From the IMG/VR virus record IMGVR_UViG_3300017917_001342, positions 434,001 to 498,000 of that record: a stretch of DNA of 64,000 nt. The stretch is one strand, 5' to 3'. The position numbers were made by a program, and so were the translations under genes. This document shows, in pieces, positions 23,721 to 51,369 of the stretch. The notes beneath the pieces were generated by a model that was not told the origin of the DNA, ran no database searches, and was given only the letters and a program-made list of their open reading frames with translations. How positions within the stretch are numbered: the first letter of the stretch is position 1; every line of letters begins with the position of its first letter.

Positions 23721-24116
23721 ATGAAATTATGGCAATCCATCGAAAATACTTTAAAGTCTCTACCAAACGCAGCAGAAGGCTATGAGCAGCAAATAGACAT
23801 ACCTGAATTTACATTTCTTGGTGTAAAGAATCAGCCAGATTTTGGACATATTAAAATATGGTTTCATGGCAAAGAAAAAACCATTGAACTCAAAAGCCTA
23901 AAAGAATATCTGCTGCAATATCGAGACACTGTTATCAGCTACGAACGTGCAACAGATGTAATGTATAAACATCTAATGGAAGCCTATGCTCCGTTTAGAT
24001 TGCGTATGGAAATTGCGTTTAGGCCGCGCGGTGGCATCAGCAGTAAAATGGTAGTAGACAGCGATTGGGGTCATCTAGGTGGCACTGATAAACTTTGGCA
24101 ACATCACAAGGACTAA
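23721..24116 (+). CDS. queF: QueF-family T-fold protein lacking the catalytic Cys
   Basis: PEFT, QPDF, ELKSLKEY, SYE and PRGGIS align with B. subtilis-type QueF, but EFTSLCP reads EFTFLGV. Confidence 0.75.
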   Translation: MKLWQSIENTLKSLPNAAEGYEQQIDIPEFTFLGVKNQPDFGHIKIWFHGKEKTIELKSLKEYLLQYRDTVISYERATDVMYKHLMEAYAPFRLRMEIAFRPRGGISSKMVVDSDWGHLGGTDKLWQHHKD

Positions 24117-24605: not shown

Positions 24606-24606
24606 C

Positions 24607-25452
24607 ATGCAAAATTACTTAGACTTATTGCAAAAAATATTAGACCGTGGTATAGACAGTGCCGATCGTACAGGTGTAGGTACTAGAAGCCTGTTTGCTG
24701 AACAGCTACGCTTTGATCTTAAACAGGGATTTCCTGCTGTAACTACTAAAAAGTTAGCATGGAAATCAATGGTAGCAGAACTGCTATGGTTCCTCGAAGG
24801 CACAGGCGACGAACGCAGACTTGCTGAAATACAACACGGTACACGTAAGCCAGAAAAGACCACAATATGGACTGCAAATGCCAATGCAGACTACTGGAAA
24901 CCCAAAGCACGCTATGAAGGTGACCTTGGTCGTGTCTACGGTGTACAGTGGCGCAACTGGCGCAAAGTTGATGGTTGGAAAACTGTCGATCAACTTAAGA
25001 ACTTGATCGAAGGCTTGCAGAACGACCCAACTGGCCGCAGACATATTATAAGTGCATGGAACCCAGGTGAAATTGATCAAATGGCATTGCCTCCGTGTCA
25101 TATGATGGCACAGTTCTACATTAGGAACAATCAGCTAAGTTGCCAAATGTATCAGCGTAGCTGTGATGCATTTTTGGGATTGCCCTTTAACATTGCCAGC
25201 TACGCACTGCTTACTCATTTGATTGCAAAAACCATAGGTGCAGAAGTTAATGAACTCATCATCACGCTTGGCGATGTGCATATCTATAACAATCACTTTG
25301 ATGCAGTGACTACACAGTTATCAAGGACACCATATGCATTGCCAAAACTGCATATTGCAGACTCTGCAACAGTATGGAACTCTAAACTTGATGACTTTAC
25401 ACTAGTTGATTATCAGCATCATCCTGCTATACAAGCAGAGATGGCGGTATAA
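24607..25452 (+). CDS. thyA: Thymidylate synthase
   Basis: DRTGVGT, ELLWFL, GRVYGVQWR, MALPPCH, QRSCDAFLGLPFNIASY, HIYNNH. Confidence 0.97.
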   Translation: MQNYLDLLQKILDRGIDSADRTGVGTRSLFAEQLRFDLKQGFPAVTTKKLAWKSMVAELLWFLEGTGDERRLAEIQHGTRKPEKTTIWTANANADYWKPKARYEGDLGRVYGVQWRNWRKVDGWKTVDQLKNLIEGLQNDPTGRRHIISAWNPGEIDQMALPPCHMMAQFYIRNNQLSCQMYQRSCDAFLGLPFNIASYALLTHLIAKTIGAEVNELIITLGDVHIYNNHFDAVTTQLSRTPYALPKLHIADSATVWNSKLDDFTLVDYQHHPAIQAEMAV

Positions 25453-33442: not shown

Positions 33443-34033
33443 TTAATTGTCGGTTTTATACCAAAACCAGCATTCGTTAGGTGCTTGCTTTAAAAGGGAA
33501 AGATCCCAACCTTTGCTTTTGTACCAACTTGAAACTGCAAAATTCACACTGAACAAATTGCTGTCATGCCCTGCAATAATGCCGCCAGTTCGTACCTTTG
33601 GATACCAACTGTCAAGGTCGGACAACACCTGCTTCATGCTGTGTCCACCATCTATAAACACAAAGTCGTATACATCGTCATCTAACATACTAGCAGCAGT
33701 TTGACTATCTTCTTTTATCAACTTAAAGCGATCGCCCATCAACGGTATGTTTTTCAACAACACACGGTAGTTCAACTCTTGTTCAAGTTTGGTAATTGGT
33801 CTATCCCAATCAATGTATGGTTGGTAATGGTCAACACCTATCAGAGAACTGATATTCGGACATTCCTGCAACATATACCAACTGTTTATACCTCGATTGA
33901 CACCTATTTCTATGCCAATTGCTGGATAAGGTAATTTCTTAAGTTCTTTCACAATGCCACGAGCAGCCTGCTGTTTGTATATCGCAGGCCAATCGGCACT
34001 TTCTAATAATGAGTTAATAGATTTGTCGTTCAC
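33443..34033 (-). CDS. Class I SAM methyltransferase (Methyltransf_24-like)
   Basis: IEIGVNRG, DFVFIDGGH, GGIIAGHD. Confidence 0.8.
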   Translation of the reverse strand: MNDKSINSLLESADWPAIYKQQAARGIVKELKKLPYPAIGIEIGVNRGINSWYMLQECPNISSLIGVDHYQPYIDWDRPITKLEQELNYRVLLKNIPLMGDRFKLIKEDSQTAASMLDDDVYDFVFIDGGHSMKQVLSDLDSWYPKVRTGGIIAGHDSNLFSVNFAVSSWYKSKGWDLSLLKQAPNECWFWYKTDN

Positions 34034-34037
34034 ATAG

Positions 34038-34045
34038 TATTTATA
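34038..34045 (-). promoter_or_regulatory. T4 late promoter consensus TATAAATA, 4 nt before the GTG start
   Basis: Exact match overlapping the upstream stop codon. Confidence 0.6.
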
Positions 34046-34577
34046 TTGGTTTTTGCCATAACCAACTGGTAACTATGCCATAACCTTGATTTGGTACAGA
34101 CGGATCAACTTCCCTATGATCGGGTATCAATTCACAACAGGCCTGTTTGACGCCTTCATGTTGCGGATGATTGTAGTCATGTCCGCCCATCCATCCTCCG
34201 GGTTTTACTTTTGGCAACCACGCAGTGATGTCTTGTACAACAGCTTCGTACGAATGATCACCATCTATCCATACAAAGTCTAAACTGTGATCTTCGTATT
34301 CAGTTGCAGCTTCTGTGCTAGGAATCTGTTTGTGAGTATAGCGTCCACAGACTTGAATCAAATTGTTGTTAAATTCAGTTTGATAGCCTACGTCAACACA
34401 GTCTAACTTGATGTTCTTGCCGCTATTAATAATCTCTACAAGCATGTATGCTGCACTTCTGCCCATGTAAGAACCGACCTCTACAAAATGTGCAGAGTCT
34501 GATACCTGTGCAATCATATCGTCGTAGATACCGGGATAGTCAAACCATCCTTCGATTTTGTTATAAAAGTGTTCCAT
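34041..34577 (-). CDS. Class I SAM methyltransferase (Methyltransf_24-like)
   Basis: VEVGSYMGRS, DFVWIDGDHSY, PGGWMGGHDY. Confidence 0.85.
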   Translation of the reverse strand: MEHFYNKIEGWFDYPGIYDDMIAQVSDSAHFVEVGSYMGRSAAYMLVEIINSGKNIKLDCVDVGYQTEFNNNLIQVCGRYTHKQIPSTEAATEYEDHSLDFVWIDGDHSYEAVVQDITAWLPKVKPGGWMGGHDYNHPQHEGVKQACCELIPDHREVDPSVPNQGYGIVTSWLWQKPI

Positions 34578-34601: not shown

Positions 34602-35195
34602 TTAACTGTGTTCTATCTTGCCATCGTCGCGACGTATTTTTCTCACTGTGGTGACAAAATCAGTATCAACAGGTTCCATTTCACTGAGAATACTGTTGCA
34701 TACATCGTTCAACCAACGAGAAATAATGTCATCTTCGGCACCAGTGTAGCCATTACTTTGTAGATATTCTACAAACGCAGGATTGTAATCTAACTCAAAA
34801 AATGTCTTGCTTGGATCAGTGGGATCCCAACTGATTTTTGGCATTGCCATATAGGGTTCGTTTAACAGATCAGCACGTTTACGATCATACTCTTGTTGTG
34901 CAATGCGACTATGCTTGAGATCAAGATCTAGCTTTGCAAGTTCTGTGGCATTTGGATTATCTGCATTATCAAGTTCTAACAGTTTCAATTCTGCTAGATA
35001 TTGATCAATACGACCGTATTGCAGATCAATTTTAATCACTGACCTTGTAAATTCTCTACTGTCTTCACCGTGCTCAATCTTTGCAAGTTCCACAGCAAGA
35101 TCGTAGCCACTGAGATTGTATTCTGCTTCGGCAATCAATCTTGATTTGCCTTTTAAGCCCCAACTTGCAGGCAAATATTTAAACGGTATTTTCAT
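34602..35195 (-). CDS. Hypothetical protein (197 aa)
   Basis: Clean ORF with FFELDYNPAFV...GYTG. Confidence 0.75.
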   Translation of the reverse strand: MKIPFKYLPASWGLKGKSRLIAEAEYNLSGYDLAVELAKIEHGEDSREFTRSVIKIDLQYGRIDQYLAELKLLELDNADNPNATELAKLDLDLKHSRIAQQEYDRKRADLLNEPYMAMPKISWDPTDPSKTFFELDYNPAFVEYLQSNGYTGAEDDIISRWLNDVCNSILSEMEPVDTDFVTTVRKIRRDDGKIEHS

Positions 35196-35206: not shown

Positions 35207-36079
35207 TTATGCCAGACTAGCATACAAGTGTATTTGCAAGTTTAGAGTAAATCCATACTTGACACAATATTCTGCTGCATATTCATGGTTGCGTTGATTA
35301 GATTCTGCGTTAAGCAGGCCCGGGGTCCAGAATGAAACTACTTCGTCAATAGTGCTGCGCTCTTGCATAGTTGTCTGGTTAGAAGTTAGTCGCAGTTTCT
35401 TTGATGCAAGTGGTACTTCGTTATAGACATTCATTGGACTTACATAGATTTCTTTGCCTGTCTTGTTGCGCCACTCATGCGCCCAATCCGGTACCTCTGC
35501 ATATGGAGAACCTTCTGTAGCTTCCATAACAAATTTCAAACAGTCTGCACGTTCGAGTATTTCTGGACGCGGTTTCAAATACCGCACTGCAATCTTATTC
35601 TTTTCTAAACATTTTGGTGAACATACTAACACAGTGGACGCTGGTATAGCTGTATTCTGTGTACCGTTTGATTCAATCTGAGTTTTAGTAAAAATTCTGT
35701 CCATGTATTCTAAAAACGGACCAATGTTGTCTTGCAGCATTGGTTCCCCACCTGTCATAACAAGCACCATTTTTTTACGAGCAACGTCGCTATGATGTGT
35801 CCATGCAGGCCTATCTAGTTTTTTATCTGTGTAGAATTGCTCGATTGTCTGTTCTACACGTTCTGCGATCTGATCAAATGTTAGCCAATCACCGTCGTCG
35901 AAGAATGTATCACAGAATTGACAATCTAAGTTACATTTTGCAAGACGAATAAAGAACGCAGGTTCTCCACGAAAGGGTCCTTCACCTTGCAGTGTCATAA
36001 ACATACTAGTTACAAACAGTTGATCTTTGCTTGCGTCTTTAAAGTATTTTTTACCAATGATTTCGTTTGTACCAAACAT
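35207..36079 (-). CDS. queE: 7-carboxy-7-deazaguanine synthase (radical SAM)
   Basis: FMTLQGEG, FIRLAKCNLDCQFCDT, TGGEPMLQ, IESNGT, CSPK, LQIH. Confidence 0.9.
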   Translation of the reverse strand: MFGTNEIIGKKYFKDASKDQLFVTSMFMTLQGEGPFRGEPAFFIRLAKCNLDCQFCDTFFDDGDWLTFDQIAERVEQTIEQFYTDKKLDRPAWTHHSDVARKKMVLVMTGGEPMLQDNIGPFLEYMDRIFTKTQIESNGTQNTAIPASTVLVCSPKCLEKNKIAVRYLKPRPEILERADCLKFVMEATEGSPYAEVPDWAHEWRNKTGKEIYVSPMNVYNEVPLASKKLRLTSNQTTMQERSTIDEVVSFWTPGLLNAESNQRNHEYAAEYCVKYGFTLNLQIHLYASLA

Positions 36080-36082
36080 GTT

Positions 36083-36268
36083 TTAACCTTTGTTATCTAT
36101 TGTATGATTATGTGCTACATCGTCTGATATATCAAGTGTATCTATAGAATCCCATCCAACTTGGTCCATTGAGTCTAAAGATACAACTAATTCTACCAGA
36201 TCATTACCGTCTTTGACCTGTATTACCCAACGTCCGTCTTCAAGTTTATGTGGATATGTTTTCATCAT
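36083..36268 (-). CDS. Hypothetical protein (about 60 aa)
   Basis: Fills the gap before queE. Confidence 0.5.
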   Translation of the reverse strand: MMKTYPHKLEDGRWVIQVKDGNDLVELVVSLDSMDQVGWDSIDTLDISDDVAHNHTIDNKG

Positions 36269-36479
36269 CTTTACTCAAAATATATAACAGTTTAACTTGT
36301 GCGATCATTTCAGCCAATGCAGTATTGGTTTCAGCGGCAGCAAGAATATCGCGCCACTGCGGTTCTTCCTGTTTAGGCGATGTTGATTTGAATCGGTCTA
36401 GTAGTGGCCCTGGTAGAAACCCAAACTCTCTAGAGTATACTGTTTTGCCACCATCTGGACTTTCGTAGATCTTAGGCAT
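36246..36479 (-). CDS. Hypothetical protein (YESPDGGKTVY motif)
   Basis: Start moved to the ATG at 36479, which overlaps the upstream stop. Confidence 0.65.
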   Translation of the reverse strand: MPKIYESPDGGKTVYSREFGFLPGPLLDRFKSTSPKQEEPQWRDILAAAETNTALAEMIAQVKLLYILSKDDENIST

Positions 36480-36681
36480 TAGGTCCAACAGGGCCTTCTG
36501 TCTTAGCCTTGCGAGCAACTACTCTACCGTGGTCGTCTGTGTCCCATTCAATGACATCACCTTCTTGCCATCCAAGATGTGCAATCATTTCTTCTGGAAA
36601 TGTGATATACAGTTCGCCGTGTTCATCTTCTTCTACTGTGCCAATAAATGTCACTGCGTCTTGGTTTAGGGTCTCGGGCAT
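36472..36681 (-). CDS. AbrB/MazE-like swapped-hairpin DNA-binding protein
   Basis: EDEHGELYITFPEEMIAHLGWQEGDVIEW matches the AbrB/SpoVT pattern. Confidence 0.65.
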   Translation of the reverse strand: MPETLNQDAVTFIGTVEEDEHGELYITFPEEMIAHLGWQEGDVIEWDTDDHGRVVARKAKTEGPVGPNA

Positions 36682-37085
36682 TGATCTGAATCCTTGGTTA
36701 ATGCATGATATACTTTGGCTTCGTTTTTTAAACGTTCGTAATCATCTGCATGTTGTTTCATAGTGTTAATCGCAATGTTCATAATATCTGCAATGGCATC
36801 GTCCAACACTGCGTCATACTTATCGCCAGCTTCTCTCAGGGGTTCGTAGGCATTTTCTAGAGCTTTGTCTCTACGCAGTATTCCCATCATGCGTTCAATG
36901 CGTTCTAATCTATCGAACACACCGTCTTTGACTTGATTACCTGTTGTCATTCTATAGATGTCTCCATCTTGTAAAGTAATACCACTGCGAGTTATATCAA
37001 CTGTGGTAAGTGCAGGTTCCCAGCCATTGGTTGTGAGAATAGAACCTTCTATTAGATTAGCGGGTACTGTTATTACGCTAGTCAT
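36666..37085 (-). CDS. Hypothetical protein (139 aa)
   Basis: ATGA overlap with the upstream gene. Confidence 0.65.
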   Translation of the reverse strand: MTSVITVPANLIEGSILTTNGWEPALTTVDITRSGITLQDGDIYRMTTGNQVKDGVFDRLERIERMMGILRRDKALENAYEPLREAGDKYDAVLDDAIADIMNIAINTMKQHADDYERLKNEAKVYHALTKDSDQCPRP

Positions 37086-37381
37086 CCGTTCCTCAGATGA
37101 TGCTGCATTATGATACTGGAAACTTCTTGTCCCAGATCTTTATCTTCGCTGATAATGTAAAGTTCTGATTCATATCTATCACGTTTTGAATCATACCAAC
37201 TAACCTGTGCAACAGTACCACCGTTTGCAGTGTGAAATTTAAAATTTGCACTGCTTCTGGTACTGAGGTCATCATCAACAGCAGATGCCTTAACAATGCC
37301 AGATGATCTGCTGTTAGTAAGACGCTGATTGTCCCAGTCTTCGCGTATCCATTTAATCACTAGTTTTTTTAGAAAATTCAT
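37082..37381 (-). CDS. Hypothetical protein (99 aa)
   Basis: ATGA overlap with the folE stop. Confidence 0.7.
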   Translation of the reverse strand: MNFLKKLVIKWIREDWDNQRLTNSRSSGIVKASAVDDDLSTRSSANFKFHTANGGTVAQVSWYDSKRDRYESELYIISEDKDLGQEVSSIIMQHHLRNG

Positions 37382-38073
37382 CTAGGTGCAAACTCCTGTT
37401 GCAATTTGATATTATCAAAGAATTCTTTCTTAGTACCGGTGTCGTGATTAAATGCACCTTTCAACACTGTGGTTTGTGTTAGGCTGCTGTGTGCCATAAT
37501 ACCACGATTTTCGCAACAGCCATGTGTTGCCTGAATATACACACCTACGTCTTTACTGCCGGTGGCTTTCATAATCTCCCTGGCTATATCGTTACAGAGT
37601 TCTTCTTGTAGTGTACCACGTCGAGCACACCACTGTGCAATACGAGTATATTTGCTAAGTCCAATTAGTTTTTGTGCAGCAATAATACCGATATATGCAA
37701 CACCAGTTACTGGTTGATGATGATGGCTGCAAACGCTTTTGATTTCACTGCGTACTACCAACATACCTTCGTAACGGTCTTCGCTGTCGTTGGGAAATGC
37801 AGTTGGATTGGGAGACTTATCATAACGTCCTGACATCAGTTCGTTATAATACATCTTAGCAAGCCTGCGTGCTGTGCCTTTGCTGTTTGGATCTGTTTCT
37901 TTGTCGATTAACAGAGTATCTAACACTGCTTCAAATGCCAGTTCGGCTTCGTCAATCAGTTTCTTTTTTATGTCTTCTGTAATGAATTGAGAAATGTTAT
38001 CACCTGCCCAGTATCTTGTACCAGATGATTTGAGTTGTTCGCGAATTTTCGCGCTAACGGGATAGTTTGTCAA
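37378..38073 (-). CDS. folE: GTP cyclohydrolase I
   Basis: SVCSHHHQP, IGLSKYTR, LQEEL, HGCCENRG, TTVLKGAF. Confidence 0.95.
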   Translation of the reverse strand: MTNYPVSAKIREQLKSSGTRYWAGDNISQFITEDIKKKLIDEAELAFEAVLDTLLIDKETDPNSKGTARRLAKMYYNELMSGRYDKSPNPTAFPNDSEDRYEGMLVVRSEIKSVCSHHHQPVTGVAYIGIIAAQKLIGLSKYTRIAQWCARRGTLQEELCNDIAREIMKATGSKDVGVYIQATHGCCENRGIMAHSSLTQTTVLKGAFNHDTGTKKEFFDNIKLQQEFAPR

Positions 38074-38130
38074 TATTGTCTCCGATGGTAAGCAGTGGAT
38101 TGCTAAGAACTTCTTAAGTTACTTAAAATG

Positions 38131-38159
38131 ATTATAGTCTAAAATAGTAGTCAATGCAA
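38131..38159 (-). promoter_or_regulatory. Sigma70-type promoter for folE
   Basis: TTGCAT-17-TATAAT. Confidence 0.7.
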
Positions 38160-38165
38160 CATTGA

Positions 38166-38600
38166 CTACACTCTTAATTTTGCGCTGGCAGACGACACAC
38201 TGATCATGCCATTATACGAGCCTGTGCCACCGTTGGTAATACTGCTAGATGCACCAACTGCACCCATTGCACCAATTGATGCTAAGTTATAGTGTCTGTC
38301 ATGCCACAGTGTTTGTTGTTGATGTTCTTCAGTCTTTAGTTTAGCTTCTACTGGATCACAGCCAGTATCTAGCATAAATGTAACGATTCTGCGCATTCTG
38401 TTAAGTCGTTGGTATAGTTCTTCACTAGACTCTTGTAGATCACTCATTAAATGATTAAATCGTTCTTCTTCGTCTTTTATTCGTGTTTTAATATTTGCAA
38501 ATTGTTCAGCAGCTTGACGGTATTCTTCAAAATACTGTTCTCTAGCAGCAACTCGTTCTTCGTTGGTCATATAGGTTGGTCCTTTCCATATTCTTGCCAT
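38166..38600 (-). CDS. Hypothetical coiled-coil protein (144 aa)
   Basis: Helical N-terminal half, G/S-rich tail. Confidence 0.6.
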   Translation of the reverse strand: MARIWKGPTYMTNEERVAAREQYFEEYRQAAEQFANIKTRIKDEEERFNHLMSDLQESSEELYQRLNRMRRIVTFMLDTGCDPVEAKLKTEEHQQQTLWHDRHYNLASIGAMGAVGASSSITNGGTGSYNGMISVSSASAKLRV

Positions 38601-39109
38601 GATGTAAATGTATCACGTGTCATCAATTCGTGTAGACTATGACACCAAACACCTGGGTTAGATGCTTTGAAATCAGTGTCATCTATTTTCAACATTGTGT
38701 TGTAGTTGAACTGTTTGATATAGGGTATTTTGACACTGATCTGTGGAATGAAATTATCATACTCGCACCATCCAGATTCTAACACTGTGTTGCAATGCGT
38801 TACATCAAAATCCAATGTTACTAGATAATCCAGCTTCAACAATGGTTTGATCATACTATCCCATTTTTGCATAGCATCGTACAAATCCACGTTGTATTTT
38901 GACATTGTTGCAGCAGGATCAAAACACTGATTTGCACCAACAAATATGTGCTTACAATCATGCTTGTTTGCATAATCTACAATAGCAATTGGACTTTGAA
39001 TATCTACCACAAACAGTGTGCGTTGACCATATGCCGGTGTGCGTTCTATTTCTGTACCAACAAAAAATACCACATTGTTTTTTACGCCGTCTGCATAATC
39101 TCGTTCCAT
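38567..39109 (-). CDS. Uncharacterised protein directly downstream of dpdA (180 aa)
   Basis: FFVGTEIERTPAYGQRTLFVV...KIDDTDFKASNPGVWC; its start overlaps the dpdA stop (TAATG). Confidence 0.75.
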   Translation of the reverse strand: MERDYADGVKNNVVFFVGTEIERTPAYGQRTLFVVDIQSPIAIVDYANKHDCKHIFVGANQCFDPAATMSKYNVDLYDAMQKWDSMIKPLLKLDYLVTLDFDVTHCNTVLESGWCEYDNFIPQISVKIPYIKQFNYNTMLKIDDTDFKASNPGVWCHSLHELMTRDTFTSWQEYGKDQPI

Positions 39110-40767
39110 TACATATCCTCTATGTCCATACTGACATCGTTGTTGGCATCCATGCCTGTGATCTGCTGTAGCATTTTTGCATGTTTATTGATCAAATCCA
39201 TTGGACGCTCGCTAGTGAATATTTCCGGACAGAGATCTCTAAACTCTAATAGGTCTGGTGTTAGATGATGCCTAGCTTCTTCGATTGCCATGTCTTGATA
39301 TTTGTTTGCAGTTTGAATTGCATCAATGTGTACTTCCACATTGTGATTCATTGCCAACAGATAACTGAACCCATCCATGCTGCTTGGCCACTTGAGCTGA
39401 TACTTGTTGCGGTCATTGTTATAGTCTACATTACCCATATCAAACAAGCCACCATTTTCGTGACTGTGCAACAGATACTCTTTGTATTCTTTAGTCCAAC
39501 GGAACTTGTCACCTGCACGACCTTCGGGTGTTTTACTCCATTCGCCGTTTTCAATTTCTTTCTTTGTAAACTGTACTTTCTTGTATTCGAGATCATCATA
39601 GCCGCGAACACAGATATCACCAACTGTACAAGCATCGCCGATACGCGAACGATAGGGATAGCAACTTTTAATACGGTTTTCAATTAACCAGTCATTTAGA
39701 CTCTGCATACCGCCCTTGAGTTCTTTTTTATCAACAATTGGTCCACCTTTGAATCCTACACTGGTTGGACTTAGTTCGTATCCATAGTACATCTGACCTT
39801 TAGCTGTCATAACAAAAGGTGATGCAGCATCAAAGCTTACAGTAAGTTCCGGATCTACATATTTTCTCAATGCACGCTGTACAGTGGTTAATGCACAGCC
39901 TGCTTTGATCTTACCGTTACCAAGATAATGCAGCCATTCACGACCTTGTAGATAACCATCGTCGCGCATGATAATCAGTCGACGTAGATTGATGCTAAAG
40001 TTACTGGCCTGTACGTTTGAGAATGCCCAGCTTTCAAATGGCAAGTCTTTGGTTGCTTCCCACCATATATCGCCTTCTTCTTGGTTACGACCTTGAAGAA
40101 CGTTTAGGAATTTAGTAGCACCTTCTTTGCGATTCTTAATAAAGAACTCGTGATTTTCTAAACTACCACGTAGGCAGTCGCCGAAGTTTTTCAAACTTGG
40201 ATGTAGACTTGCACCAGTTACTGGATCAAGACCAAACTTAACCAGTGCATAGGTAGGCCAGTCTAGTACCATACTGTAGTCACTAGTTGCTTCTAACCAG
40301 CGCAGCAGTTTCATACGAACATCATCTTTATCATTTAGATGCTGTTCGGGTGTTTGATTTGGCTTAGGATGCCATGGGTATTTTAGCACACCTGTTGCAG
40401 CTTGGAAACCACCACTGTCACCAATCATCACAGTGCGACTTCTGTCACGCTGTTGAACTAGGCTTTCTTGTTCCCAACTCTGTTCTGGATCAAGTATTGC
40501 ATGTCCTGCCGAATACAGTGCAACAGGATAATAAAACATGCTGTTTGCAGGATCTAGAAAATCTAGATCCTTGAGTCCGTTGACCATACCTGGTGGCAAC
40601 GATTCTCTCATGTTGTAGTTTTTCATGCTGGCAATTCTAGCATAGATAGCACTGATACTAGGCAAGAAACATGCATAGTCTTTTTGCGGATCAGCAAGAT
40701 TTTTAGCAGCGGGATTTAGGTTTAATCCGTCTGTTGTGAATTGAAATCGTTTAAATGTGTTTGTCAT
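39109..40767 (-). CDS. dpdA: TGT-fold guanine transglycosylase, probable DNA 7-deazaguanine insertase (DpdA-like)
   Basis: GDSGGFQ TGT motif, VLDWP, LNVLQG, HYLG, SFDAASP; no CxCxxC zinc site seen; flanked by folE and queE. Confidence 0.72.
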   Translation of the reverse strand: MTNTFKRFQFTTDGLNLNPAAKNLADPQKDYACFLPSISAIYARIASMKNYNMRESLPPGMVNGLKDLDFLDPANSMFYYPVALYSAGHAILDPEQSWEQESLVQQRDRSRTVMIGDSGGFQAATGVLKYPWHPKPNQTPEQHLNDKDDVRMKLLRWLEATSDYSMVLDWPTYALVKFGLDPVTGASLHPSLKNFGDCLRGSLENHEFFIKNRKEGATKFLNVLQGRNQEEGDIWWEATKDLPFESWAFSNVQASNFSINLRRLIIMRDDGYLQGREWLHYLGNGKIKAGCALTTVQRALRKYVDPELTVSFDAASPFVMTAKGQMYYGYELSPTSVGFKGGPIVDKKELKGGMQSLNDWLIENRIKSCYPYRSRIGDACTVGDICVRGYDDLEYKKVQFTKKEIENGEWSKTPEGRAGDKFRWTKEYKEYLLHSHENGGLFDMGNVDYNNDRNKYQLKWPSSMDGFSYLLAMNHNVEVHIDAIQTANKYQDMAIEEARHHLTPDLLEFRDLCPEIFTSERPMDLINKHAKMLQQITGMDANNDVSMDIEDM

Positions 40768-40797
40768 GTCTAAGTATGGTCACTGGTTATTATATTG

Positions 40798-41898
40798 TCA
40801 AGCTGATTTTACTAAACTGTTTACCAATGGCGTCGCATCAGTAAACTGTGATATTTTGTTAACTTGTTCTGCAATATCCTGTTGCAATTGGTTGTCTCGA
40901 TTTAGTACAGCGTTTACGTCTGCTTTTATACGAGCAATTAGATTATCTTTATTTTTGAGGTAATTGTCAAAATTAATTGTCCATTCGCTAGGATACTTAA
41001 AACGATCATTCCACATTTCTTTATAGCTTAGCCTATCTGGTACCATTGGCACAGCACCTGCAAGCAGACCTTCGATAACACTAATGCCATAGGTCTCTTG
41101 CAAATTAGCACTGAACACTATTGCAGCAGATCCCAGTATCTCATGATATTGATCCTTTGTTAGGGTACGTTCTTGACACACTATCCATTCATACTCGGGC
41201 ATTGACTCTGCAAGGTCTTTGAAAATCACTAGTTGCTTTTCTGGTGCTAGTCTGTGTGGGAATACAATCTGTGGCTTCTTAACTGGTTGTGCATACGCAG
41301 GCATAATATCATGTAGATATTCCATTGGCCAGCCTGTTAGCTGTACGCGGCCTTGAGAATTCTCATGCCATTTGTTCCATTCTTCGATACTGCCGTTGTC
41401 ATCAAACAGTGTATTCAAAAACAGTTCGGCATGAAAATCAGTTGCAAACCAATTTACATCATAGGTGTAGAACATTGTGCCTTCTGCATTGCGAACCCAG
41501 GGTTTGTTGCCAATCAGCCTACCTAAGAAGTCTTGCGGGTCATAGCTGCCAGCATGCCACATGCCATGTATTTCAATATTTTTCCCAAGTAATTCAGCCA
41601 TGTAGCGTAGCTGAATTACAGTTGGGTTCCATGCATCTGTATACAAAAATTTGTCACCATCTTGTATTTTGCCGTCTCTGAATAGCTGTGCAATTACACT
41701 TAGTTGCGAACCTTTATAGATGTTTGTTGCACCAAAATCTAGAAATGCACCCGGTGTTGGTTGTGCCGGTACATCTTCACCTTCTATGACTGCAACGGTT
41801 TCTGCACCTGCTGCGTCTAGCAGTTTGGGAATATGATCATACCATTGTCTGGTATAGCGAGTGTCAATTGGTTCAATTGGTACTACGTATATAGTCAT
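40798..41898 (-). CDS. GT-B fold (GT4-like) glycosyltransferase
   Basis: FPHRLAPEK, SANLQETYGISVIEGLLAGAVPMVPDRLSY (ExFG...E-type signature). Confidence 0.8.
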   Translation of the reverse strand: MTIYVVPIEPIDTRYTRQWYDHIPKLLDAAGAETVAVIEGEDVPAQPTPGAFLDFGATNIYKGSQLSVIAQLFRDGKIQDGDKFLYTDAWNPTVIQLRYMAELLGKNIEIHGMWHAGSYDPQDFLGRLIGNKPWVRNAEGTMFYTYDVNWFATDFHAELFLNTLFDDNGSIEEWNKWHENSQGRVQLTGWPMEYLHDIMPAYAQPVKKPQIVFPHRLAPEKQLVIFKDLAESMPEYEWIVCQERTLTKDQYHEILGSAAIVFSANLQETYGISVIEGLLAGAVPMVPDRLSYKEMWNDRFKYPSEWTINFDNYLKNKDNLIARIKADVNAVLNRDNQLQQDIAEQVNKISQFTDATPLVNSLVKSA

Positions 41899-41899
41899 G

Positions 41900-42352
41900 T
41901 TACATTCCCCACATGTTGTCTTCGTATCGACGTATCACACGTTCGATTATATCTTGTGCATCTTTATTGGCTTTGGTAGTGTGAATAGCATTCTTCAACG
42001 ACCGTATCATATGCTTGCGCATAATTTCTTGATTTTCTATGTATCGATCCATAGATATTTTACCAATGTCATTGCTGTTAGAATGCCATTCATTGTAAAC
42101 GCGAACTAATTCATCAAAGTTGCGTTTGCTTTCTTCGTCCCACATGCTAACTGGCTCATAGGGATCGTCACAACCATTGATATAGTTGCACAATCCGCTA
42201 TCCATTAGATTAACAATACTTTCTAAGTCTTGAATACGTTTTTGTTGATCGACGATAGTGTCAATGGCTTCTTTGATCAAAAGATGTACTTTACTATCAG
42301 CCATATGCGATTCTAATCGGTTTACCAAATTAGCAAGTGTGGCGTCATTCAT
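41900..42352 (-). CDS. Hypothetical protein (150 aa)
   Basis: Start overlaps the upstream stop (TAATG). Confidence 0.65.
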   Translation of the reverse strand: MNDATLANLVNRLESHMADSKVHLLIKEAIDTIVDQQKRIQDLESIVNLMDSGLCNYINGCDDPYEPVSMWDEESKRNFDELVRVYNEWHSNSNDIGKISMDRYIENQEIMRKHMIRSLKNAIHTTKANKDAQDIIERVIRRYEDNMWGM

Positions 42353-42759
42353 TATGCTAGTCCTTTAATGTGTTCAGCACGGTCCCACTTGATTAGTGCG
42401 CCGTTTTCATTGTCTTCGCTAACTTCGATCCACACACTGCGATTTGGATAACGAGCAGAAATTTCTGCATACAAATCATCTGCAATCATCTCGCAGCTTT
42501 TGTAATCTAGATTGAGTATGTTGTCGCCATAGAGATTTTGCAGCCAACGTTTGAACTGAATAAATTCAATGTCCCTGTCGTCGTGTGTTACACTGATCCA
42601 AACTTGAAAGTGAAAAATGTGACGATGCGGATGCCCTAGAAAACTAACATCATATTTGTCACCAGTTGCAAGTTTTGGATCAGTTAATGCCGCAGGATAT
42701 CTGTGAATACCTTCCTGGGTAAACTTTACCCAGATCATTTTGCTTGTAGCATCAACCAT
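42352..42759 (-). CDS. dpdL: QueD-like T-fold protein with LxxxHRHxF motif (DpdL-like CDG decarboxylase candidate)
   Basis: LGHPHRHIF replaces the QueD CxxxHGH motif; SCEMIADDL...EVSEDNENG C-terminus; AGGAG RBS. Confidence 0.6.
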   Translation of the reverse strand: MVDATSKMIWVKFTQEGIHRYPAALTDPKLATGDKYDVSFLGHPHRHIFHFQVWISVTHDDRDIEFIQFKRWLQNLYGDNILNLDYKSCEMIADDLYAEISARYPNRSVWIEVSEDNENGALIKWDRAEHIKGLA

Positions 42760-42818: not shown

Positions 42819-45800
42819 TCAAAGATCGATAGTAGTTCTAACGGTTTTAATAACCATAGTACCACTATTAGCAGGAGTGAATATTAATTCCACAACTCCG
42901 CCTACAATGTCTGCATCAAACTCGCCTAAGCTGCCACTGGTATAGATGTAGTTGTATTCGGTAATGTACACATCAGTACCGTCATGTATTAACATAACCT
43001 GTCCGGATTGATAAGTGCTATTGGTTTGATCTGTAATCTGTATAAAGTAGTGAGCAGTTCTGTATTCTGTTGCAGGCCATGAGTCTACTACCTGTTGGAA
43101 CGTGCTAGAACTAGTATATGAATTACCATCTAGTACCCAGGTGTTACCGCTTACAGTAGAATTGCTGTTGAGTTTTTCTACAGTAACAGTACCTCTAGAA
43201 GTCAATGCACTGACGTTAGCATGACCGGCAACAGCAATGTTACCGCCCGCATTAACATCACCGCCAAGACCTATGCCACCACCTACTACCAATGCACCTG
43301 TGGCAGTGTTTGTGCTTGCATTAGTTGAGTTAACTGTTACATTCTGTCCAAACTGACCATAGACGTTGCTTACCAATGCATTTACTGTTGCAGTACCACT
43401 ACTCTGTAGTGATGTAACTGTAAATGCAGTGCCGCTAATAGCACCATTTGATATCAAACTGCCTACTGAGAGACTGCTGTTAAAATTGGATGCACCGGTA
43501 ACACCAACACCGCCGCGTACATCCAAGTTACTGTTTGGTGTTGTAGTGTTTATACCAATACTGCCAGTGAATGCAGTATAACCACTCAGGCCACCGGTTA
43601 TATCTAGATAAGCACCTGTATCGTTATTGATACTGCCTCTAAAACTAGCAACGTTGCTTACATATAATCCAGTACCCGGTCCGTCTGCTAAGATTGCACC
43701 GCCCATAACTTCAAGTTGTGTAGCTGGATTATTAGTGCCGATACCAACACGACCTGCGAAATAGTTTACACTACCACCAGTGACAATGTTGCCACCTATA
43801 CCAATACCGCCGCCTACAACCAACGCACCGGTAGTTGTACTGATACTAGGATTGGTACTGTTAACAGTTACGTTTTGACCAAACAAACCATAGACGTTTG
43901 AAATCAATACGTCTGTTAAGGTTGTGGTGCTGCTTTGTATAGATGTAAATCCGGCATGTGTACCCGTAACTGTGCCGTTACTAGCTAGAGAACTTACACT
44001 GGCTCTACCAACTGATTGTATGTTAGTTGCTACAACATTGGTATTACTTGATAAACTGTTAACAGATGTGTGACCGATGACTTTTAATTCGTTGACAGTC
44101 AGTCTTGTTGCATTGTTGTCCCAGAATAAGTTGTCACCGTTACCTGAGAAGCTGTTTGCTGCGCCCGCAAATTGCACTGTACCTGGAATACCATAACTCA
44201 GTGTGCTGGTAGCAGATGTAGTTTGGAAACTGCCGTCTGGGAATATTATGCCGCTGGCTGTATTGGAATTACCTATATGTATATTTCCGTATACGTCCAA
44301 TGGATAATTGTAAGTTGCAGTGCCTATACCGATTGCAACATTGGCAATAATGTAAGTACCAGCAGTAATACTGGTGTTGCTAACCAACACATTGAACTGC
44401 GAACTACCGCCAACAGTTATATTGTTAGCAGTAAATCCTATATTTGCAACAACATAATTTGCTTGTAACGTGCCACTTGATTGAATATCACCGTTGCTTA
44501 CTAATCGTTGACCGGTGATAGTACCGTTTGCTTGTATAAATGTATTACTGCGTAGAGAATCACCTACGATTTTATCGTTGGCCTGTATGGCAATATTAGA
44601 ATAGAGATTCTGTGCAACAATCTGGCCGGTGGATTGTATAAAACTGTTACTGTAAATTTCGCCAGCCCACAGTGTACCATTGGCCTGTATTGTAGTATTA
44701 CTTGTTAGTTTGTTACCTAATACGTAACTATCAGCCTGAACAAAGTTATTACTATAATATCCATTGGCATATACAAAAGATGCTGCTCGTACAGTGGAAT
44801 TACTTGAAAATGTGTCAACAATTACAATACCAGTAGCATTCAAACTACCAGTTTTCATGTCAACGTTGCTGTAAATGCTGTCCCCTAAAATTACAGTAGC
44901 AGCTTGAATTGTAGAATTGCTAAAAATTCTATTTGCAGTTATATCACTGCGAGCAGAAATGCTGTCTGCATTCACATAGGTATTGGAGTCTAAATATCCA
45001 GTCTGTGTACCTAAATGTGTATAGGTATAATTTGATACAGTTTGAGAAAAATTACCTTGTGTTGCATTTAACACAGATGCTTGTACAAAGGAATTGCTGA
45101 TAATAGCATTGGCTATTATTCTGTCAGATGCATTAACTACTGGTGAAAATACTGAAATGTTACCAACTAGAACATTACCAGTAATATAGTTTAATGCTGT
45201 AATATTGTTACTAGTAACCGAATCATTTGCTGCCAACAACAATCCAGTTATTGTGTTTGTAGCAGACATGTTGGTAGCACTGATTGCAGTGTTACTCTGT
45301 ATATTATTACCTGTGATAGTACCTGCGGCGCTGACAAAACTGTTGCTTCTTATACCGTTTGATTGTATGTCGTTTACAGCTCGTATACCGTCTAGCGAAG
45401 AAATTTGACCGCCGGTGTTCAGAGAATCTCCGATACCAACACCACCTGCAACAATTAATGCACCTGTGGTAGTATTAGTACTTACAGTAGTATTGCTGAG
45501 ATATTGACTACCAAAGTGAGCTCTACCATAGACATATCCGGCTATCGCTTCAAATGGGTTATATACATTACTAGAATTTGGTTGCACATTGGTGATGTAA
45601 ATGAGATCACCTGTGCTGTTTTGCCAACCTAAGAATGCATTATTATCATCAATGACATAATAATTCATTATCATGCCACGATCATAACCATCGTTAACAG
45701 TTAATGGGTCATTGTTAATCGATTCGTTACCAACTATGATAGTTGGACCTAGTATAGAAACTACGTTACTGTTGATAATAGAACTGTTACCAGTGACGAT

Positions 45801-47597
45801 TAAGTTACCGGCAACACGCAGGTTACCAGCTATAAATGCAGCACCTCCTACGTTAAGGTTGCCGCCAATTCCCACACCGCCTGTAACAGTCAATGCACCG
45901 CTTGCTGTACCATAGCTCTGTGCAGTGTTTGTAACGTTAACGATACCGGATACATTTAAATCTGCTGTGACAACTGTGGTATTTGCAGTTATGATATTTG
46001 CACTTATTTGATTAAATGCATTGATGTTTTCAGAAGTTACGTTGAGATTTGCGTATATTTGATCGGCTATTACATCAGCAGATTGAATGGTAGTATTACT
46101 GACAATTTGTTGCGATACTATACCGGTAATTACGTTTACAGTGTTTGCAGTTATCTCAGTGTTGGTAATTACAGAATTTAACTGTGCAACACCGACAGAT
46201 TTTATAGTAGATGCTTCTACAAATCCATTACTGCGAATATCGTTGCCTATTATTAAATCTGCGGCGGTCATAGTAGACAAACTGTCAACTGCCCCGCCTA
46301 GTATTCTACCGGCAGCATAGATCACAGTATTACTTGATAGAGAATCTACATTTGCGTGAAAATGTACGGTTATTCTCTGAGTTGTGGTACTACCAGTTAC
46401 TTCTAATGTGTTAAGCGTAGTGTCACTCAACACCTGTAGATTATTTGACGTAATGGTATTATTAGTGTTTAAACTGTCTACACTAGTTAAACCAGTTGAT
46501 TGTAGATTGGTAGCAACTACATTGGTATTGCTATTCAAACTTTGAACAGTGGTAGTTCCACTATTTTGCAGCGATGTAAATGTGCCAGCAGTACCGTTTA
46601 TAGTAGTACCAACAATTGCGCCGTTGCTATTCAATGAATTTACAGTAGCAACTCCGGCGGTATTAAAATCACCGCTATACAGCGTGTTAGTAAATGTGCC
46701 GTTGACTGCGTCTACATAGGTATTGCTTGTAAATGCGTTGACAACTGCATTACCACTTACCTGCAGATTGGTAAATGTACCAGTGTTAAAATTGATTACA
46801 TTGCCACTAATAGTGGTATTGCTTACAAGTGCGTTTACTGTTGCTGTTCCGCTGCTTTGTAAACTGTTAAATGTACCATCAGTGCCATTTATACTTGTGC
46901 CATTGATTGCACCATTACTCGCAAGCGCATTTACTGTTGCAGTACCAGAAACATTTAACTGGCCAGCGTAGGCATCACTGGCAAATATACCAGTTAAACC
47001 GCTAACCGCAGTGTTGCTTGCTAACGAGTTGACAGTAGCAACACCCGCAGTGTTGAGCTCAGCACTATAGATTGCAGTATTTGATACAAAATTGTTAACG
47101 GTTGCAGTGTTTGAAACAGTTAAGTCGTTGCCGATGATATTAAGTGCAGCAGCATAACCATTTACAATTAGATTCGCACCGTTGTCTAACACAAGGTTAT
47201 TGCTGGTGTAATCCCAAAATAAGTGCGACGAATCGCCGGCAAATGCGTTGCCAACACCGGCAAACTGTATAGTACCTTGAATACCAAAGCTTGGTGTATT
47301 TTTAGTAGCAGTGCTTTGAAATGTTCCGTCTGGAAATATTATACCGCTTGAAGTTGCAGTATTGCTGATATGCACATTACCCCAAACATCTAATGGATAG
47401 ACGATTTGAGATGTGCCTATGCCAATAGCTGTAAAATTACCTTGGTTTATTATTACGTTGCCTGGTAATCCGGATGCAGTTAGCAGTTGAAGGTCGCCGC
47501 CAGAATTGACTAAGCGAGGTCCGCCTTTGCCAAAGCTCAGGTCTCCAGAAACGCCACTCTGTCTAAAATCAAAAGTTGGGTTAGTTGGTAAAGTCAT
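42819..47597 (-). CDS. Long tail fibre-like protein (1592 aa)
   Basis: N/S/T/G-rich, repeated TVNxLxSN and GALxVxGGxGIG motifs, internal duplication, globular C-terminal domain; late promoter upstream. Confidence 0.75.
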   Translation of the reverse strand: MTLPTNPTFDFRQSGVSGDLSFGKGGPRLVNSGGDLQLLTASGLPGNVIINQGNFTAIGIGTSQIVYPLDVWGNVHISNTATSSGIIFPDGTFQSTATKNTPSFGIQGTIQFAGVGNAFAGDSSHLFWDYTSNNLVLDNGANLIVNGYAAALNIIGNDLTVSNTATVNNFVSNTAIYSAELNTAGVATVNSLASNTAVSGLTGIFASDAYAGQLNVSGTATVNALASNGAINGTSINGTDGTFNSLQSSGTATVNALVSNTTISGNVINFNTGTFTNLQVSGNAVVNAFTSNTYVDAVNGTFTNTLYSGDFNTAGVATVNSLNSNGAIVGTTINGTAGTFTSLQNSGTTTVQSLNSNTNVVATNLQSTGLTSVDSLNTNNTITSNNLQVLSDTTLNTLEVTGSTTTQRITVHFHANVDSLSSNTVIYAAGRILGGAVDSLSTMTAADLIIGNDIRSNGFVEASTIKSVGVAQLNSVITNTEITANTVNVITGIVSQQIVSNTTIQSADVIADQIYANLNVTSENINAFNQISANIITANTTVVTADLNVSGIVNVTNTAQSYGTASGALTVTGGVGIGGNLNVGGAAFIAGNLRVAGNLIVTGNSSIINSNVVSILGPTIIVGNESINNDPLTVNDGYDRGMIMNYYVIDDNNAFLGWQNSTGDLIYITNVQPNSSNVYNPFEAIAGYVYGRAHFGSQYLSNTTVSTNTTTGALIVAGGVGIGDSLNTGGQISSLDGIRAVNDIQSNGIRSNSFVSAAGTITGNNIQSNTAISATNMSATNTITGLLLAANDSVTSNNITALNYITGNVLVGNISVFSPVVNASDRIIANAIISNSFVQASVLNATQGNFSQTVSNYTYTHLGTQTGYLDSNTYVNADSISARSDITANRIFSNSTIQAATVILGDSIYSNVDMKTGSLNATGIVIVDTFSSNSTVRAASFVYANGYYSNNFVQADSYVLGNKLTSNTTIQANGTLWAGEIYSNSFIQSTGQIVAQNLYSNIAIQANDKIVGDSLRSNTFIQANGTITGQRLVSNGDIQSSGTLQANYVVANIGFTANNITVGGSSQFNVLVSNTSITAGTYIIANVAIGIGTATYNYPLDVYGNIHIGNSNTASGIIFPDGSFQTTSATSTLSYGIPGTVQFAGAANSFSGNGDNLFWDNNATRLTVNELKVIGHTSVNSLSSNTNVVATNIQSVGRASVSSLASNGTVTGTHAGFTSIQSSTTTLTDVLISNVYGLFGQNVTVNSTNPSISTTTGALVVGGGIGIGGNIVTGGSVNYFAGRVGIGTNNPATQLEVMGGAILADGPGTGLYVSNVASFRGSINNDTGAYLDITGGLSGYTAFTGSIGINTTTPNSNLDVRGGVGVTGASNFNSSLSVGSLISNGAISGTAFTVTSLQSSGTATVNALVSNVYGQFGQNVTVNSTNASTNTATGALVVGGGIGLGGDVNAGGNIAVAGHANVSALTSRGTVTVEKLNSNSTVSGNTWVLDGNSYTSSSTFQQVVDSWPATEYRTAHYFIQITDQTNSTYQSGQVMLIHDGTDVYITEYNYIYTSGSLGEFDADIVGGVVELIFTPANSGTMVIKTVRTTIDL

Positions 47598-51036: not shown

Positions 51037-51369
51037 TTATACACGAGGTTTTGGTTTTCTACCACGTTTGCGGCCAGTTGATCTGTTACTGCCATCTGCA
51101 TTTATGTTGTAGACTTCTGCGTATCTGTCTAAACTCATGCCTTCTATACTGGTAATTAGATCCATTGATATTTTTATTGCTGCTGAGGTATACGGGTCCC
51201 TCAGCAGCAAAATGTATCCATCTACAGCACCGTCGATTTTATCTATTACCATATCTCGATAATGATGAGTGACTGTTCCATATTTAGAATGCTGTGGTAT
51301 TTTTGCTGTAACCACAGTGTCTTCAACTAATACTCCTGATAGAATCAATCGTTCTATAACTGCTGTCAT
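51037..51369 (-). CDS. Hypothetical protein with basic C-terminal GRKRGRKPK motif
   Basis: ATGA overlap with the clpA stop. Confidence 0.7.
   Translation of the reverse strand: MTAVIERLILSGVLVEDTVVTAKIPQHSKYGTVTHHYRDMVIDKIDGAVDGYILLLRDPYTSAAIKISMDLITSIEGMSLDRYAEVYNINADGSNRSTGRKRGRKPKPRV

What the first reader, a model, noticed from the sequence alone, without database searches (positions are those of the whole stretch)
35207..42759. 7-deazaguanine DNA-modification region with non-canonical composition
Seen: queE, folE, a DSGGFQ TGT-fold gene, a GT-B glycosyltransferase and a QueD-like protein with LGHPHRHIF, on one strand with sigma70-like promoters. No queC and no canonical CxxxHGH QueD are in the window. 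Established: FolE-QueD-QueE make CDG from GTP, and phage DpdA inserts 7-deazaguanines into DNA. As I recall, the LxxxHRHxF QueD paralogue (DpdL) is reported to decarboxylate CDG to 7-deazaguanine. Inference: the genome carries 7-deaza-dG or dCDG, possibly further decorated by the adjacent GT, the orphan gene and the Cys-less QueF into an undescribed hypermodified guanine for anti-restriction/anti-CRISPR defence.
Basis: partly seen in the sequence, partly recalled or inferred. Interest (0 to 1): 0.8.

Follow-up and report, generated by a model that had tools for sequence, protein, structure and literature searches.

The report
Deazaguanine DNA-modification cluster in a megaphage
A 519-kb uncultivated phage carries genes predicted to swap guanine in its DNA for a 7-deazaguanine base, together with a conserved sugar-transferase and a protein of unknown fold that no described pathway accounts for.

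Summary
On the minus strand of 35207-42759 lie QueE, FolE, a 552-aa TGT-fold protein with DSGGFQ, a 366-aa GT1/GT4-like glycosyltransferase and a 135-aa QueD paralogue with the DpdL motif LGHPHRHIF.

Profile and tblastn searches find no QueC or canonical QueD in the window. But the window is only 12% of a 518,643-bp phage contig, and relatives keep QueD elsewhere, so a "non-canonical composition" is not shown. Sigma70-like sites are not enriched.

The closest cultured relative is Pseudomonas jumbo phage PA5oct. Its DNA resists G-containing restriction enzymes, and the chemistry of its modification is unknown.

Three observations I did not find in the papers I searched:
- The TGT-fold enzyme lacks the Zn site of TGT and bacterial DpdA. 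It belongs to a family of at least 4,589 unannotated proteins.
- The glycosyltransferase sits beside or near DpdL in seven phage lineages, in varying gene order.
- A 180-aa protein with no PDB fold match is translationally coupled to the transglycosylase.

The Cys-less QueF is real. It lies 11 kb from the cluster, next to DHFR and ThyA, and relatives lack it.

Verdict: a new variant of a known system. A sugar-decorated deazaguanine is plausible but unproven.

The parts
42352..42759 (-). DpdL-like QueD/PTPS paralogue, 135 aa, motif LGHPHRHIF
   Evidence: phrog_17812 1e-30. tblastn hits: Phosso 68%, ACP17 54%, PA5oct 56%, phiST DpdL 32% at E 3e-7. Invariant residues H19, H45, H47, F49, R62, E65, S88, C89, E90, E115. 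hhalign against a QueD alignment: prob 90.7, E 1.3e-6. 2,180 cluster representatives in the protein library.
41900..42352 (-). 150-aa ORF of unknown function between DpdL-like and GT, specific to this clade
   Evidence: No Pfam or PHROG match. No tblastn match in the PA5oct, ACP17, Phosso, L088 or L089 loci.
40798..41898 (-). Putative GT1/GT4-like (GT-B type) glycosyltransferase, 366 aa
   Evidence: 18 of 31 homologues hit PF00534 weakly. Invariant Q267-E268...E276 (E-x7-E). This motif aligns with the WaaG motif region, E 0.067. Homologues lie next to DpdL in Phosso, PA5oct, ACP17 and BUCT-ZZ01.
39109..40767 (-). Zn-less TGT-fold protein, a DpdA-like putative DNA guanine transglycosylase, 552 aa, DSGGFQ at 40402-40419
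   Evidence: AF2 pLDDT 89. Foldseek against PDB and BFVD. Invariant D117, D169, Q225, G226, H280, G283, D313. No CxCxxC motif. No Pfam or PADLOC hit. At least 4,589 homologues.
38567..39109 (-). 180-aa conserved partner protein of unknown fold, start overlapping the transglycosylase stop
   Evidence: Its start at 39109 coincides with the last base of the 552-aa gene. A homologue lies directly upstream of ACP17 dpdA. Homologues lie directly downstream of the DpdA-like gene in L089 and L171. AF2 pLDDT 88, best PDB Foldseek E 0.17. At least 5,279 homologues.
38166..38570 (-). 134-aa coiled-coil-like ORF of unknown function, conserved after the 180-aa gene
   Evidence: JGI gene call of 134 aa. Homologues in L089. 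ORFs of similar size at the same position in the P0016 contig and L171.
37378..38073 (-). FolE, GTP cyclohydrolase I
   Evidence: Pfam PF01227 3e-39 and NCBIfam FolE 1e-38.
36083..37381 (-). Five small ORFs (99, 139, 69, 90 and 61 aa) with no family match; the slot where a relative carries QueD
   Evidence: No Pfam match for the 99- and 139-aa ORFs. The QueD HMM is negative here. In L089 a PTPS gene sits in this interval.
35207..36079 (-). QueE-like radical SAM enzyme (CDG synthase)
   Evidence: phrog_2076 1e-47. NCBIfam QueE models, best 1.1e-20, below their cut-offs. CNLDCQFC motif. BcepGomr QueE hits it at 1e-18.
34602..35195 (-). 197-aa conserved syntenic gene of unknown function between QueE and the 5'-3' exonuclease
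   Evidence: Homologues at the same position in PA5oct, Phosso and L089.
33443..34577 (-). Two Methyltransf_24 SAM methyltransferases; possible clade-specific add-on
   Evidence: PF13578 at 4e-18 each. Present at this position in the two nearest relatives. Absent from the PA5oct, Phosso and ACP17 loci.
23721..24116 (+). QueF-like T-fold protein lacking the catalytic Cys; probably not part of the module
   Evidence: Pfam QueF 3e-18. Gly replaces Cys55 while the ELKSLKEY motif is kept. Followed by DHFR and ThyA.

Best explanation
The cluster is a QueC-independent, DpdL-type 7-deazaguanine DNA-modification module of a 519-kb phage.

Proposed pathway:
1. FolE converts GTP to dihydroneopterin triphosphate.
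2. A QueD activity makes CPH4. No QueD gene is in the window; it is presumed to lie elsewhere in the genome or to come from the host.
3. QueE makes 7-carboxy-7-deazaguanine (CDG).
4. The DpdL-like T-fold paralogue converts CDG onward. The published proposal is decarboxylation to 7-deazaguanine.
5. The 552-aa Zn-less TGT-fold enzyme exchanges guanine in phage DNA for that base after replication. It probably acts with the translationally coupled 180-aa protein.
6. The glycosyltransferase, which travels with DpdL in several lineages, most likely adds a further step (sugar transfer) in the same pathway.

The outcome would be DNA that resists host restriction.

Shown here: gene identities, folds, motifs, synteny and linkage. 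Inferred: every chemical step, the DNA target, the role of the 180-aa protein and the role of the GT.
For: - FolE and QueE are identified.
- The 552-aa protein has a TGT fold with DSGGFQ and three invariant Asp residues.
- The 135-aa protein has the DpdL motif and is homologous to phiST DpdL. phiST DNA is fully dDG.
- The gene order DpdL, GT, transglycosylase, 180-aa gene, FolE, QueE is kept in relatives at 50-77% identity.
- The same components sit next to each other in ACP17.
- GT and DpdL are adjacent in Phosso, PA5oct, ACP17 and BUCT-ZZ01, in both gene orders. They lie within 4 kb in BCSR5, X1 and BUDD.
- PA5oct DNA is refractory to five G-containing restriction enzymes (PMC12191111).
- Iyer et al. 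2021 listed PA5oct as carrying a deazaguanine synthesis/incorporation system.
- One DpdL homologue is fused to a Vut_1 (PF02592) domain. From my own knowledge this is the family of YhhQ, a queuosine-precursor transporter.
Against: - No QueD is in the window, or in the fetched stretches (about 22 kb each) around the cluster in the two nearest relatives.
- DpdL activity has never been demonstrated. ACP17 dpdL plus dpdA gave no dDG in E. coli.
- The transglycosylase lacks the Zn site said to be conserved in DpdA and TGT. It matches no TGT or DpdA sequence profile.
- 7-deazaguanine offers no obvious hydroxyl for a glycosyltransferase.
- Six DpdL lineages, including phiST, have no GT detectable by tblastn.
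- The GT fold was not modelled.
Confidence: 0.6

Rival explanations
1. The core pathway is the same, but the end product is plain 2'-deoxy-7-deazaguanosine (or dCDG). The glycosyltransferase acts on something else, such as another base or a host or virion glycan.
For: - phiST makes dDG with DpdL and no GT.
- dDG has no hydroxyl acceptor.
- The window holds other sugar genes: an NTP_transferase and a GT2+TPR protein.
Against: GT and DpdL stay adjacent in at least four lineages despite reversed gene order and rearranged surroundings. In Phosso their ORFs overlap.
Confidence: 0.25
2. In this clade the DpdL-like protein replaces QueD. It would make CPH4 or another tetrahydropterin from dihydroneopterin triphosphate, so the window already holds the whole base-synthesis pathway.
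For: - No QueD is found in the window, or in the fetched stretches around the cluster in the two nearest relatives.
- The protein is a QueD paralogue that keeps the His triad and the Glu.
Against: - phiST, ACP17, Phosso, BCSR5, BUCT-ZZ01, X1 and BUDD carry both QueD and DpdL.
- The motif Cys that QueD needs is replaced by Leu.
- 88% of the genome was not seen.
Confidence: 0.1
3. The TGT-fold enzyme modifies tRNA (a queuosine-like base) rather than DNA.
For: The best PDB matches are tRNA-guanine transglycosylases.
Against: - The genes lie among replication genes: a 5'-3' exonuclease here, and DNA polymerase or primase next to the homologues.
- PA5oct DNA itself is restriction-resistant.
- Known phage homologues of this fold are DpdA enzymes.
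Confidence: 0.05
4. FolE, the PTPS-like protein and the GT make a pterin glycoside. Together with the QueF-like protein, DHFR and ThyA this would be pterin/folate metabolism, not DNA modification.
For: - FolE, a PTPS-like T-fold protein and a GT are the ingredients of bacterial pterin-glycoside synthesis (my own knowledge, not tested).
- A relative has a short-chain dehydrogenase (SDR) in the cluster.
Against: It does not explain QueE or the TGT-fold enzyme, which stay in the cluster throughout. DpdL correlates with dDG in phiST.
Confidence: 0.03

Closest known systems
Cellulophaga phage phiST dDG pathway (FolE, QueD, QueE, DpdL, DpdA3; Cui, Hutinet et al., NAR 2023, PMC10516641)
   Same: FolE, QueE and a DpdL with LxxxHRHxF; no QueC; a TGT-superfamily enzyme in the cluster.
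   Different: - phiST DpdA3 is 259 aa. It shows no profile similarity to the 552-aa protein and only a weak structural match (E 6.6e-4).
- phiST has QueD in the cluster.
- phiST has no GT homologue and no 180-aa homologue.
Pseudomonas jumbo phage PA5oct (Wroclawvirus) cluster EST35_0316-0322
   Same: Homologous transglycosylase (33% identity), GT (40%) and DpdL (56%) genes side by side, with a QueE gene, the 197-aa gene and the 5'-3' exonuclease in similar order. A modified G is inferred from restriction resistance.
   Different: - The PA5oct QueE belongs to a different lineage.
- No 180-aa homologue, FolE or methyltransferases in the fetched locus.
- The GT and DpdL order is reversed.
- Its DpdL has HFH in place of HRH.
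Acidovorax phage ACP17 cluster (QueD, FolE, 132-aa gene, dpdA, GT, DpdL, QueE)
   Same: The 180-aa homologue, a transglycosylase, the GT, DpdL and QueE are contiguous.
   Different: - Its 424-aa DpdA is only marginally similar (hhalign E 1.3e-3, motifs in register).
- Canonical QueD is present in the cluster.
Bacterial Dpd system DpdA/DpdB (PDB 7ui4; PMC10164549)
   Same: TGT-like TIM barrel, the DSGG-type acid/base Asp and further invariant Asp residues; an accessory protein is needed (DpdB there).
   Different: - No CXCX2CX22H Zn site.
- No PADLOC or Pfam match.
- The partner is a 180-aa protein of unknown fold, not a ParB-like ATPase.
- The inserted base is presumably not preQ0, because QueC is absent from the window.
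Glycosylated modified bases: T4 glucosyl-hmC in DNA and mannosyl- or galactosyl-queuosine in tRNA (my own knowledge)
   Same: A GT-B type enzyme decorating a modified base is an established counter-defence or tuning strategy.
   Different: - No sequence match to the T4 glucosyltransferase families in Pfam.
- The acceptor group here is unknown.

Membership tests
DpdA / TGT superfamily | TGT-like TIM-barrel fold | tested here: met
   AF2 pLDDT 89. Foldseek top 9 PDB hits are all TGT, QTRT or DpdA, prob 1.00. Viral TGT/DpdA hits in BFVD.
DpdA / TGT superfamily | General acid/base Asp in a DSGG(F/Y/L)Q motif | tested here: met
   D117-S-G-G-F-Q122 is invariant in 36 sequences. The same hexapeptide occurs in E. 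coli Tgt at residue 89.
DpdA / TGT superfamily | Base-recognition Asp and nucleophile Asp | tested here: inconclusive
   D169 (LDWP) and D313 (SFDAAS) are invariant and in the expected order. They are in register with ACP17 DpdA. No structural superposition on 7ui4 was possible.
DpdA / TGT superfamily | Structural Zn site CXCX2CX22H, stated to be conserved in DpdA and TGT (PMC10164549) | tested here: not met
   No C.C..C motif in the window protein or in the PA5oct, Phosso, L088 or ACP17 homologues. E. coli Tgt has CDCYTC.
DpdA / TGT superfamily | Match to curated sequence models (Pfam TGT PF01702, PADLOC DpdA) | tested here: not met
   No hit. hhalign against E. coli Tgt: E 2.4e-3, prob 12.
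DpdA / TGT superfamily | Exchanges guanine in DNA for a 7-deazaguanine | not testable with these tools
   Only indirect evidence: PA5oct DNA resists restriction.
DpdL (proposed CDG decarboxylase) | QueD/PTPS T-fold paralogue | tested here: met
   hhalign against an 83-sequence QueD alignment: prob 90.7, E 1.3e-6. The best PDB profile hit is 2dj6, labelled only 'hypothetical protein PH0634', E 0.047. From my own knowledge it is a PTPS homologue.
DpdL (proposed CDG decarboxylase) | LxxxHRHxF in place of QueD CxxxHGH | tested here: met
   LGHPHRHIF at 42613-42639. H45, H47 and F49 are invariant. The Arg varies across the family, for example HFH in PA5oct.
DpdL (proposed CDG decarboxylase) | Homology to phiST CGPG_00067 | tested here: met
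   32% identity over 89% of the query, E 3e-7 against the phage collection.
DpdL (proposed CDG decarboxylase) | [quoted passage not shown] | tested here: inconclusive
   FolE, QueE and a DpdA-like gene are present. QueC and QueD are absent from the window. 455 kb of the genome was not available.
DpdL (proposed CDG decarboxylase) | Decarboxylates CDG | not testable with these tools
   Never shown for any member.
QueE (CDG synthase) | Radical SAM CX3CX2C motif and a QueE family match | tested here: met
   CNLDCQFC. phrog_2076 1e-47. The NCBIfam QueE equivalog scores 74 bits against a cut-off of 200, so it is a divergent member.
GT-B glycosyltransferase (GT1/GT4-like) | C-terminal nucleotide-sugar domain with E-x7-E | tested here: inconclusive
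   PF00534 hits are sub-threshold (18 of 31 homologues, best 1.7e-5; window copy 0.044). E268 and E276 are invariant. A profile search of PDB gave only E 0.4.
QueF (preQ0 reductase) | Catalytic Cys that forms the thioimide | tested here: not met
   Gly aligns with B. subtilis Cys55. The Pfam QueF domain and the ELKSLKEY motif are present.

The most novel reading that the evidence does not exclude
A large, environmentally widespread group of big phages, including PA5oct, ACP17, Phosso and this 519-kb phage, carries an undescribed guanine hypermodification. The guanine would be a 7-deazaguanine derivative further decorated by the DpdL-linked glycosyltransferase. It would be installed by a Zn-less TGT-fold transglycosylase working with a 180-aa partner of novel fold.
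Probability: 0.3. Interest if true: 0.85.

Novelty: new variant of a known kind. Interest (0 to 1): 0.6.

Why it matters
7-deazaguanine DNA modifications protect phages from restriction, and they are now themselves targets of host nucleases and glycosylases.

The chemistry in PA5oct-like phages, which have been studied for phage therapy, is unknown. Published attempts to reconstitute dDG from dpdL plus dpdA failed. The two conserved extra genes found here, the GT and the 180-aa partner, are obvious candidates for the missing components.

Each of these families has thousands of unannotated homologues in metagenomes, so solving one member would annotate many genes.

Tried and rejected
- Megablast of the region against GenBank phages found no match.
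- Sequence searches of the 552-aa protein against PDB, Pfam, NCBIfam, PHROGs and PADLOC gave nothing useful. Only the fold search worked.
- The 180-aa protein gave no result by PDB profile search or by Foldseek.
- A GT profile against PDB gave E 0.4. hhalign against E. coli WaaG and WaaB was not significant.
- I tried to find QueD on the window's own contig with two scans of IMG/VR. One used Phosso QueD and one used a QueD alignment. The contig was not among the 80 loci kept.
- Pfam scans of DpdL fusion proteins were mostly uninformative, apart from one Vut_1 fusion.
- No supplementary files were held for the NAR 2023 paper, so I could not check which DpdA subfamily its authors assigned to ACP17.

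Full report
**What is there.**
The minus strand of 33.4-42.8 kb carries one co-directional block. In order of transcription it holds:
- a 135-aa QueD paralogue (42759-42352);
- a 150-aa ORF;
- a 366-aa putative glycosyltransferase (41898-40798);
- a 552-aa protein with DSGGFQ (40767-39109);
- a 180-aa ORF whose start overlaps the stop of the 552-aa gene (39109-38567);
- a 134-aa ORF;
- FolE (38073-37378);
- five small ORFs;
- QueE (36079-35207);
- a 197-aa ORF;
- two Methyltransf_24 genes;
- a 5'-3' exonuclease.

FolE and QueE are clear family members. G+C content is about 0.40 throughout, so the "non-canonical composition" of the title can only refer to gene content. Sigma70-like sites are not enriched: 21 found against 26.4 +/- 4.5 in shuffles.

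**Where it comes from.**
An exact 40-mer places the window on IMG/VR contig IMGVR_UViG_3300017917_001342, which is 518,643 bp long. The gene's record coordinates put the window at about 434,001-498,000. This is a very large uncultivated phage. Elsewhere the window encodes ClpB-, DnaJ- and deformylase-like proteins, a RuBisCO-large-like protein and several radical SAM enzymes. There is no near-identical GenBank phage.

**The TGT-fold protein.**
No sequence library recognises it. A model built from 36 homologues is confident (pLDDT 89). Its nine best PDB matches are all tRNA-guanine transglycosylases, QTRT1/2 or Salmonella DpdA 7ui4. In BFVD it matches phage TGT/DpdA proteins from Motura, nt-1, Bella96 and R5C, and more weakly phiST DpdA3.

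D117-SGGFQ, D169 and D313 are invariant. They occur in the order expected for the acid/base, base-recognition and nucleophile aspartates described for DpdA (PMC10164549). That paper states the CXCX2CX22H zinc site is conserved in DpdA and TGT. The site is absent here and in the PA5oct, Phosso, L088 and ACP17 proteins.

I therefore describe the protein as working like a DpdA and belonging to the TGT superfamily. I do not file it in the bacterial DpdA family or in DpdA3. The family has at least 4,589 members, none with a Pfam domain.

**The DpdL-like protein.**
LGHPHRHIF fits the published DpdL signature LxxxHRHxF. The protein hits phiST DpdL, aligns to a QueD profile and belongs to a family with 2,180 representatives. 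Across 35 members, H19, H45, H47, F49, R62, E65, the S88-C89-E90 triplet and E115 are invariant. The Arg of HRH is not invariant.

The decarboxylase function is a proposal only. Expression of the phiST and ACP17 genes gave no dDG.

**Conserved companions.**
- GT and DpdL are adjacent in Phosso (overlapping ORFs), PA5oct, ACP17 and BUCT-ZZ01, in both gene orders. They lie within 4 kb in BCSR5, X1 and BUDD.
- Six DpdL lineages, including the dDG phage phiST, show no GT.
- The GT call itself is moderate: weak PF00534 hits in 18 of 31 homologues and an invariant E-x7-E.
- The 180-aa protein is coupled to the transglycosylase here, in ACP17, in L089 and in L171. Its model is confident, but no PDB fold matches it.
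- Metagenomic relatives at 50-77% identity keep the whole gene order.

**QueD and QueC.**
Neither is in the window. A QueD HMM with filters off and tblastn with four QueD queries and one QueC query were negative, with positive controls for QueE and FolE.

The window is only 12% of the genome. Phosso keeps QueD about 220 kb from DpdL. X1 and BUDD keep it about 100 kb away. ACP17, BCSR5, BUCT-ZZ01 and a 50%-identical relative have it in the cluster. Two attempts to find it on the window's own contig were inconclusive.

**The QueF-like gene.**
It is real and lacks the catalytic Cys. It sits at 23.7 kb on the other strand, directly upstream of DHFR and ThyA. It is only about 35% identical to phage QueFs. 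No Phosso, PA5oct or ACP17 record is among the 40 listed of the 67 matching phage records. I see no evidence that it belongs to the module.

**Mechanism and what is known.**
The best reading is a QueC-independent deazaguanine pathway whose base is inserted into DNA by base exchange.

In the relative PA5oct, virion DNA resists five G-containing restriction enzymes and is targeted by nucleases that sense modified G. Its chemistry is undetermined. Iyer et al. 2021 had already noted a deazaguanine system in PA5oct. The kind of system is therefore known.

I found no paper describing three things: the GT-DpdL linkage, the 180-aa partner, and the Zn-less transglycosylase family. Whether the GT yields a sugar-decorated deazaguanine is open, and it can be tested in cultured relatives.

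Noticed in passing
window 56938-58161 (+), with 55900-56622 and 59314-60387: A RuBisCO large-chain-like protein (Pfam 2.5e-39) sits beside an NTP_transferase and a GT2+TPR protein. This is unusual cargo for a phage; it may be a RuBisCO-like protein working in sugar or sulfur metabolism.
   Followed up: no
window 51366-55044 (-): ClpB-like AAA+ chaperone, peptide deformylase and a full DnaJ in a row: a phage-encoded proteostasis set.
   Followed up: no
window 19176-23640: Three radical SAM genes are clustered (motifs). Two also give weak SPASM matches, one of them below Pfam's cut-off. Neighbouring ORFs have no family match. This may be a peptide- or cofactor-maturation module.
   Followed up: no
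window 23721-25452 (+): A QueF-like protein with Gly in place of the catalytic Cys, but with the QueF NADPH motif kept, lies directly upstream of DHFR and thymidylate synthase. It may be a T-fold enzyme of pterin/folate metabolism rather than of deazaguanine metabolism.
   Followed up: partly
window 33443-34577 (-): Two tandem Methyltransf_24 genes follow QueE and the 197-aa gene. They occur only in this phage's nearest relatives, so they could add a clade-specific methylation step.
   Followed up: partly
window 42819-47597 (-) and 15-8909 (+): Two very long ORFs: a 1,592-aa repeat-rich, fibre-like protein immediately upstream of the cluster, and a 2,964-aa ORF at the window start.
   Followed up: no
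ENA contig of 94,964 bp that carries P0016; Phosso locus L004:14519-15637: In a relative whose DpdA-like protein is 77% identical, the 630-aa gene in the QueE position has Hint/intein Pfam domains, so QueE appears to be interrupted by an intein. Phosso QueE has an insertion of about 80 aa.
   Followed up: no
L176 (Synechococcus phage BUCT-ZZ01) 3459-3920: A gene annotated as xanthine-guanine phosphoribosyltransferase lies between QueE and QueD in a DpdL+GT cluster. This hints that some of these phages may turn the free deazaguanine base into a nucleotide.
   Followed up: no
P0496 (312 aa, metagenomic): A DpdL-like domain is fused to a Vut_1 (PF02592) domain. From my own knowledge this is the YhhQ family of queuosine-precursor transporters. 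The fusion could be a gene-calling artefact.
   Followed up: no
window 38147-38169: A 10-bp-stem hairpin followed by a T-rich tail lies between the 134-aa ORF and FolE on the minus strand. It is the only clear terminator-like site inside the cluster.
   Followed up: no
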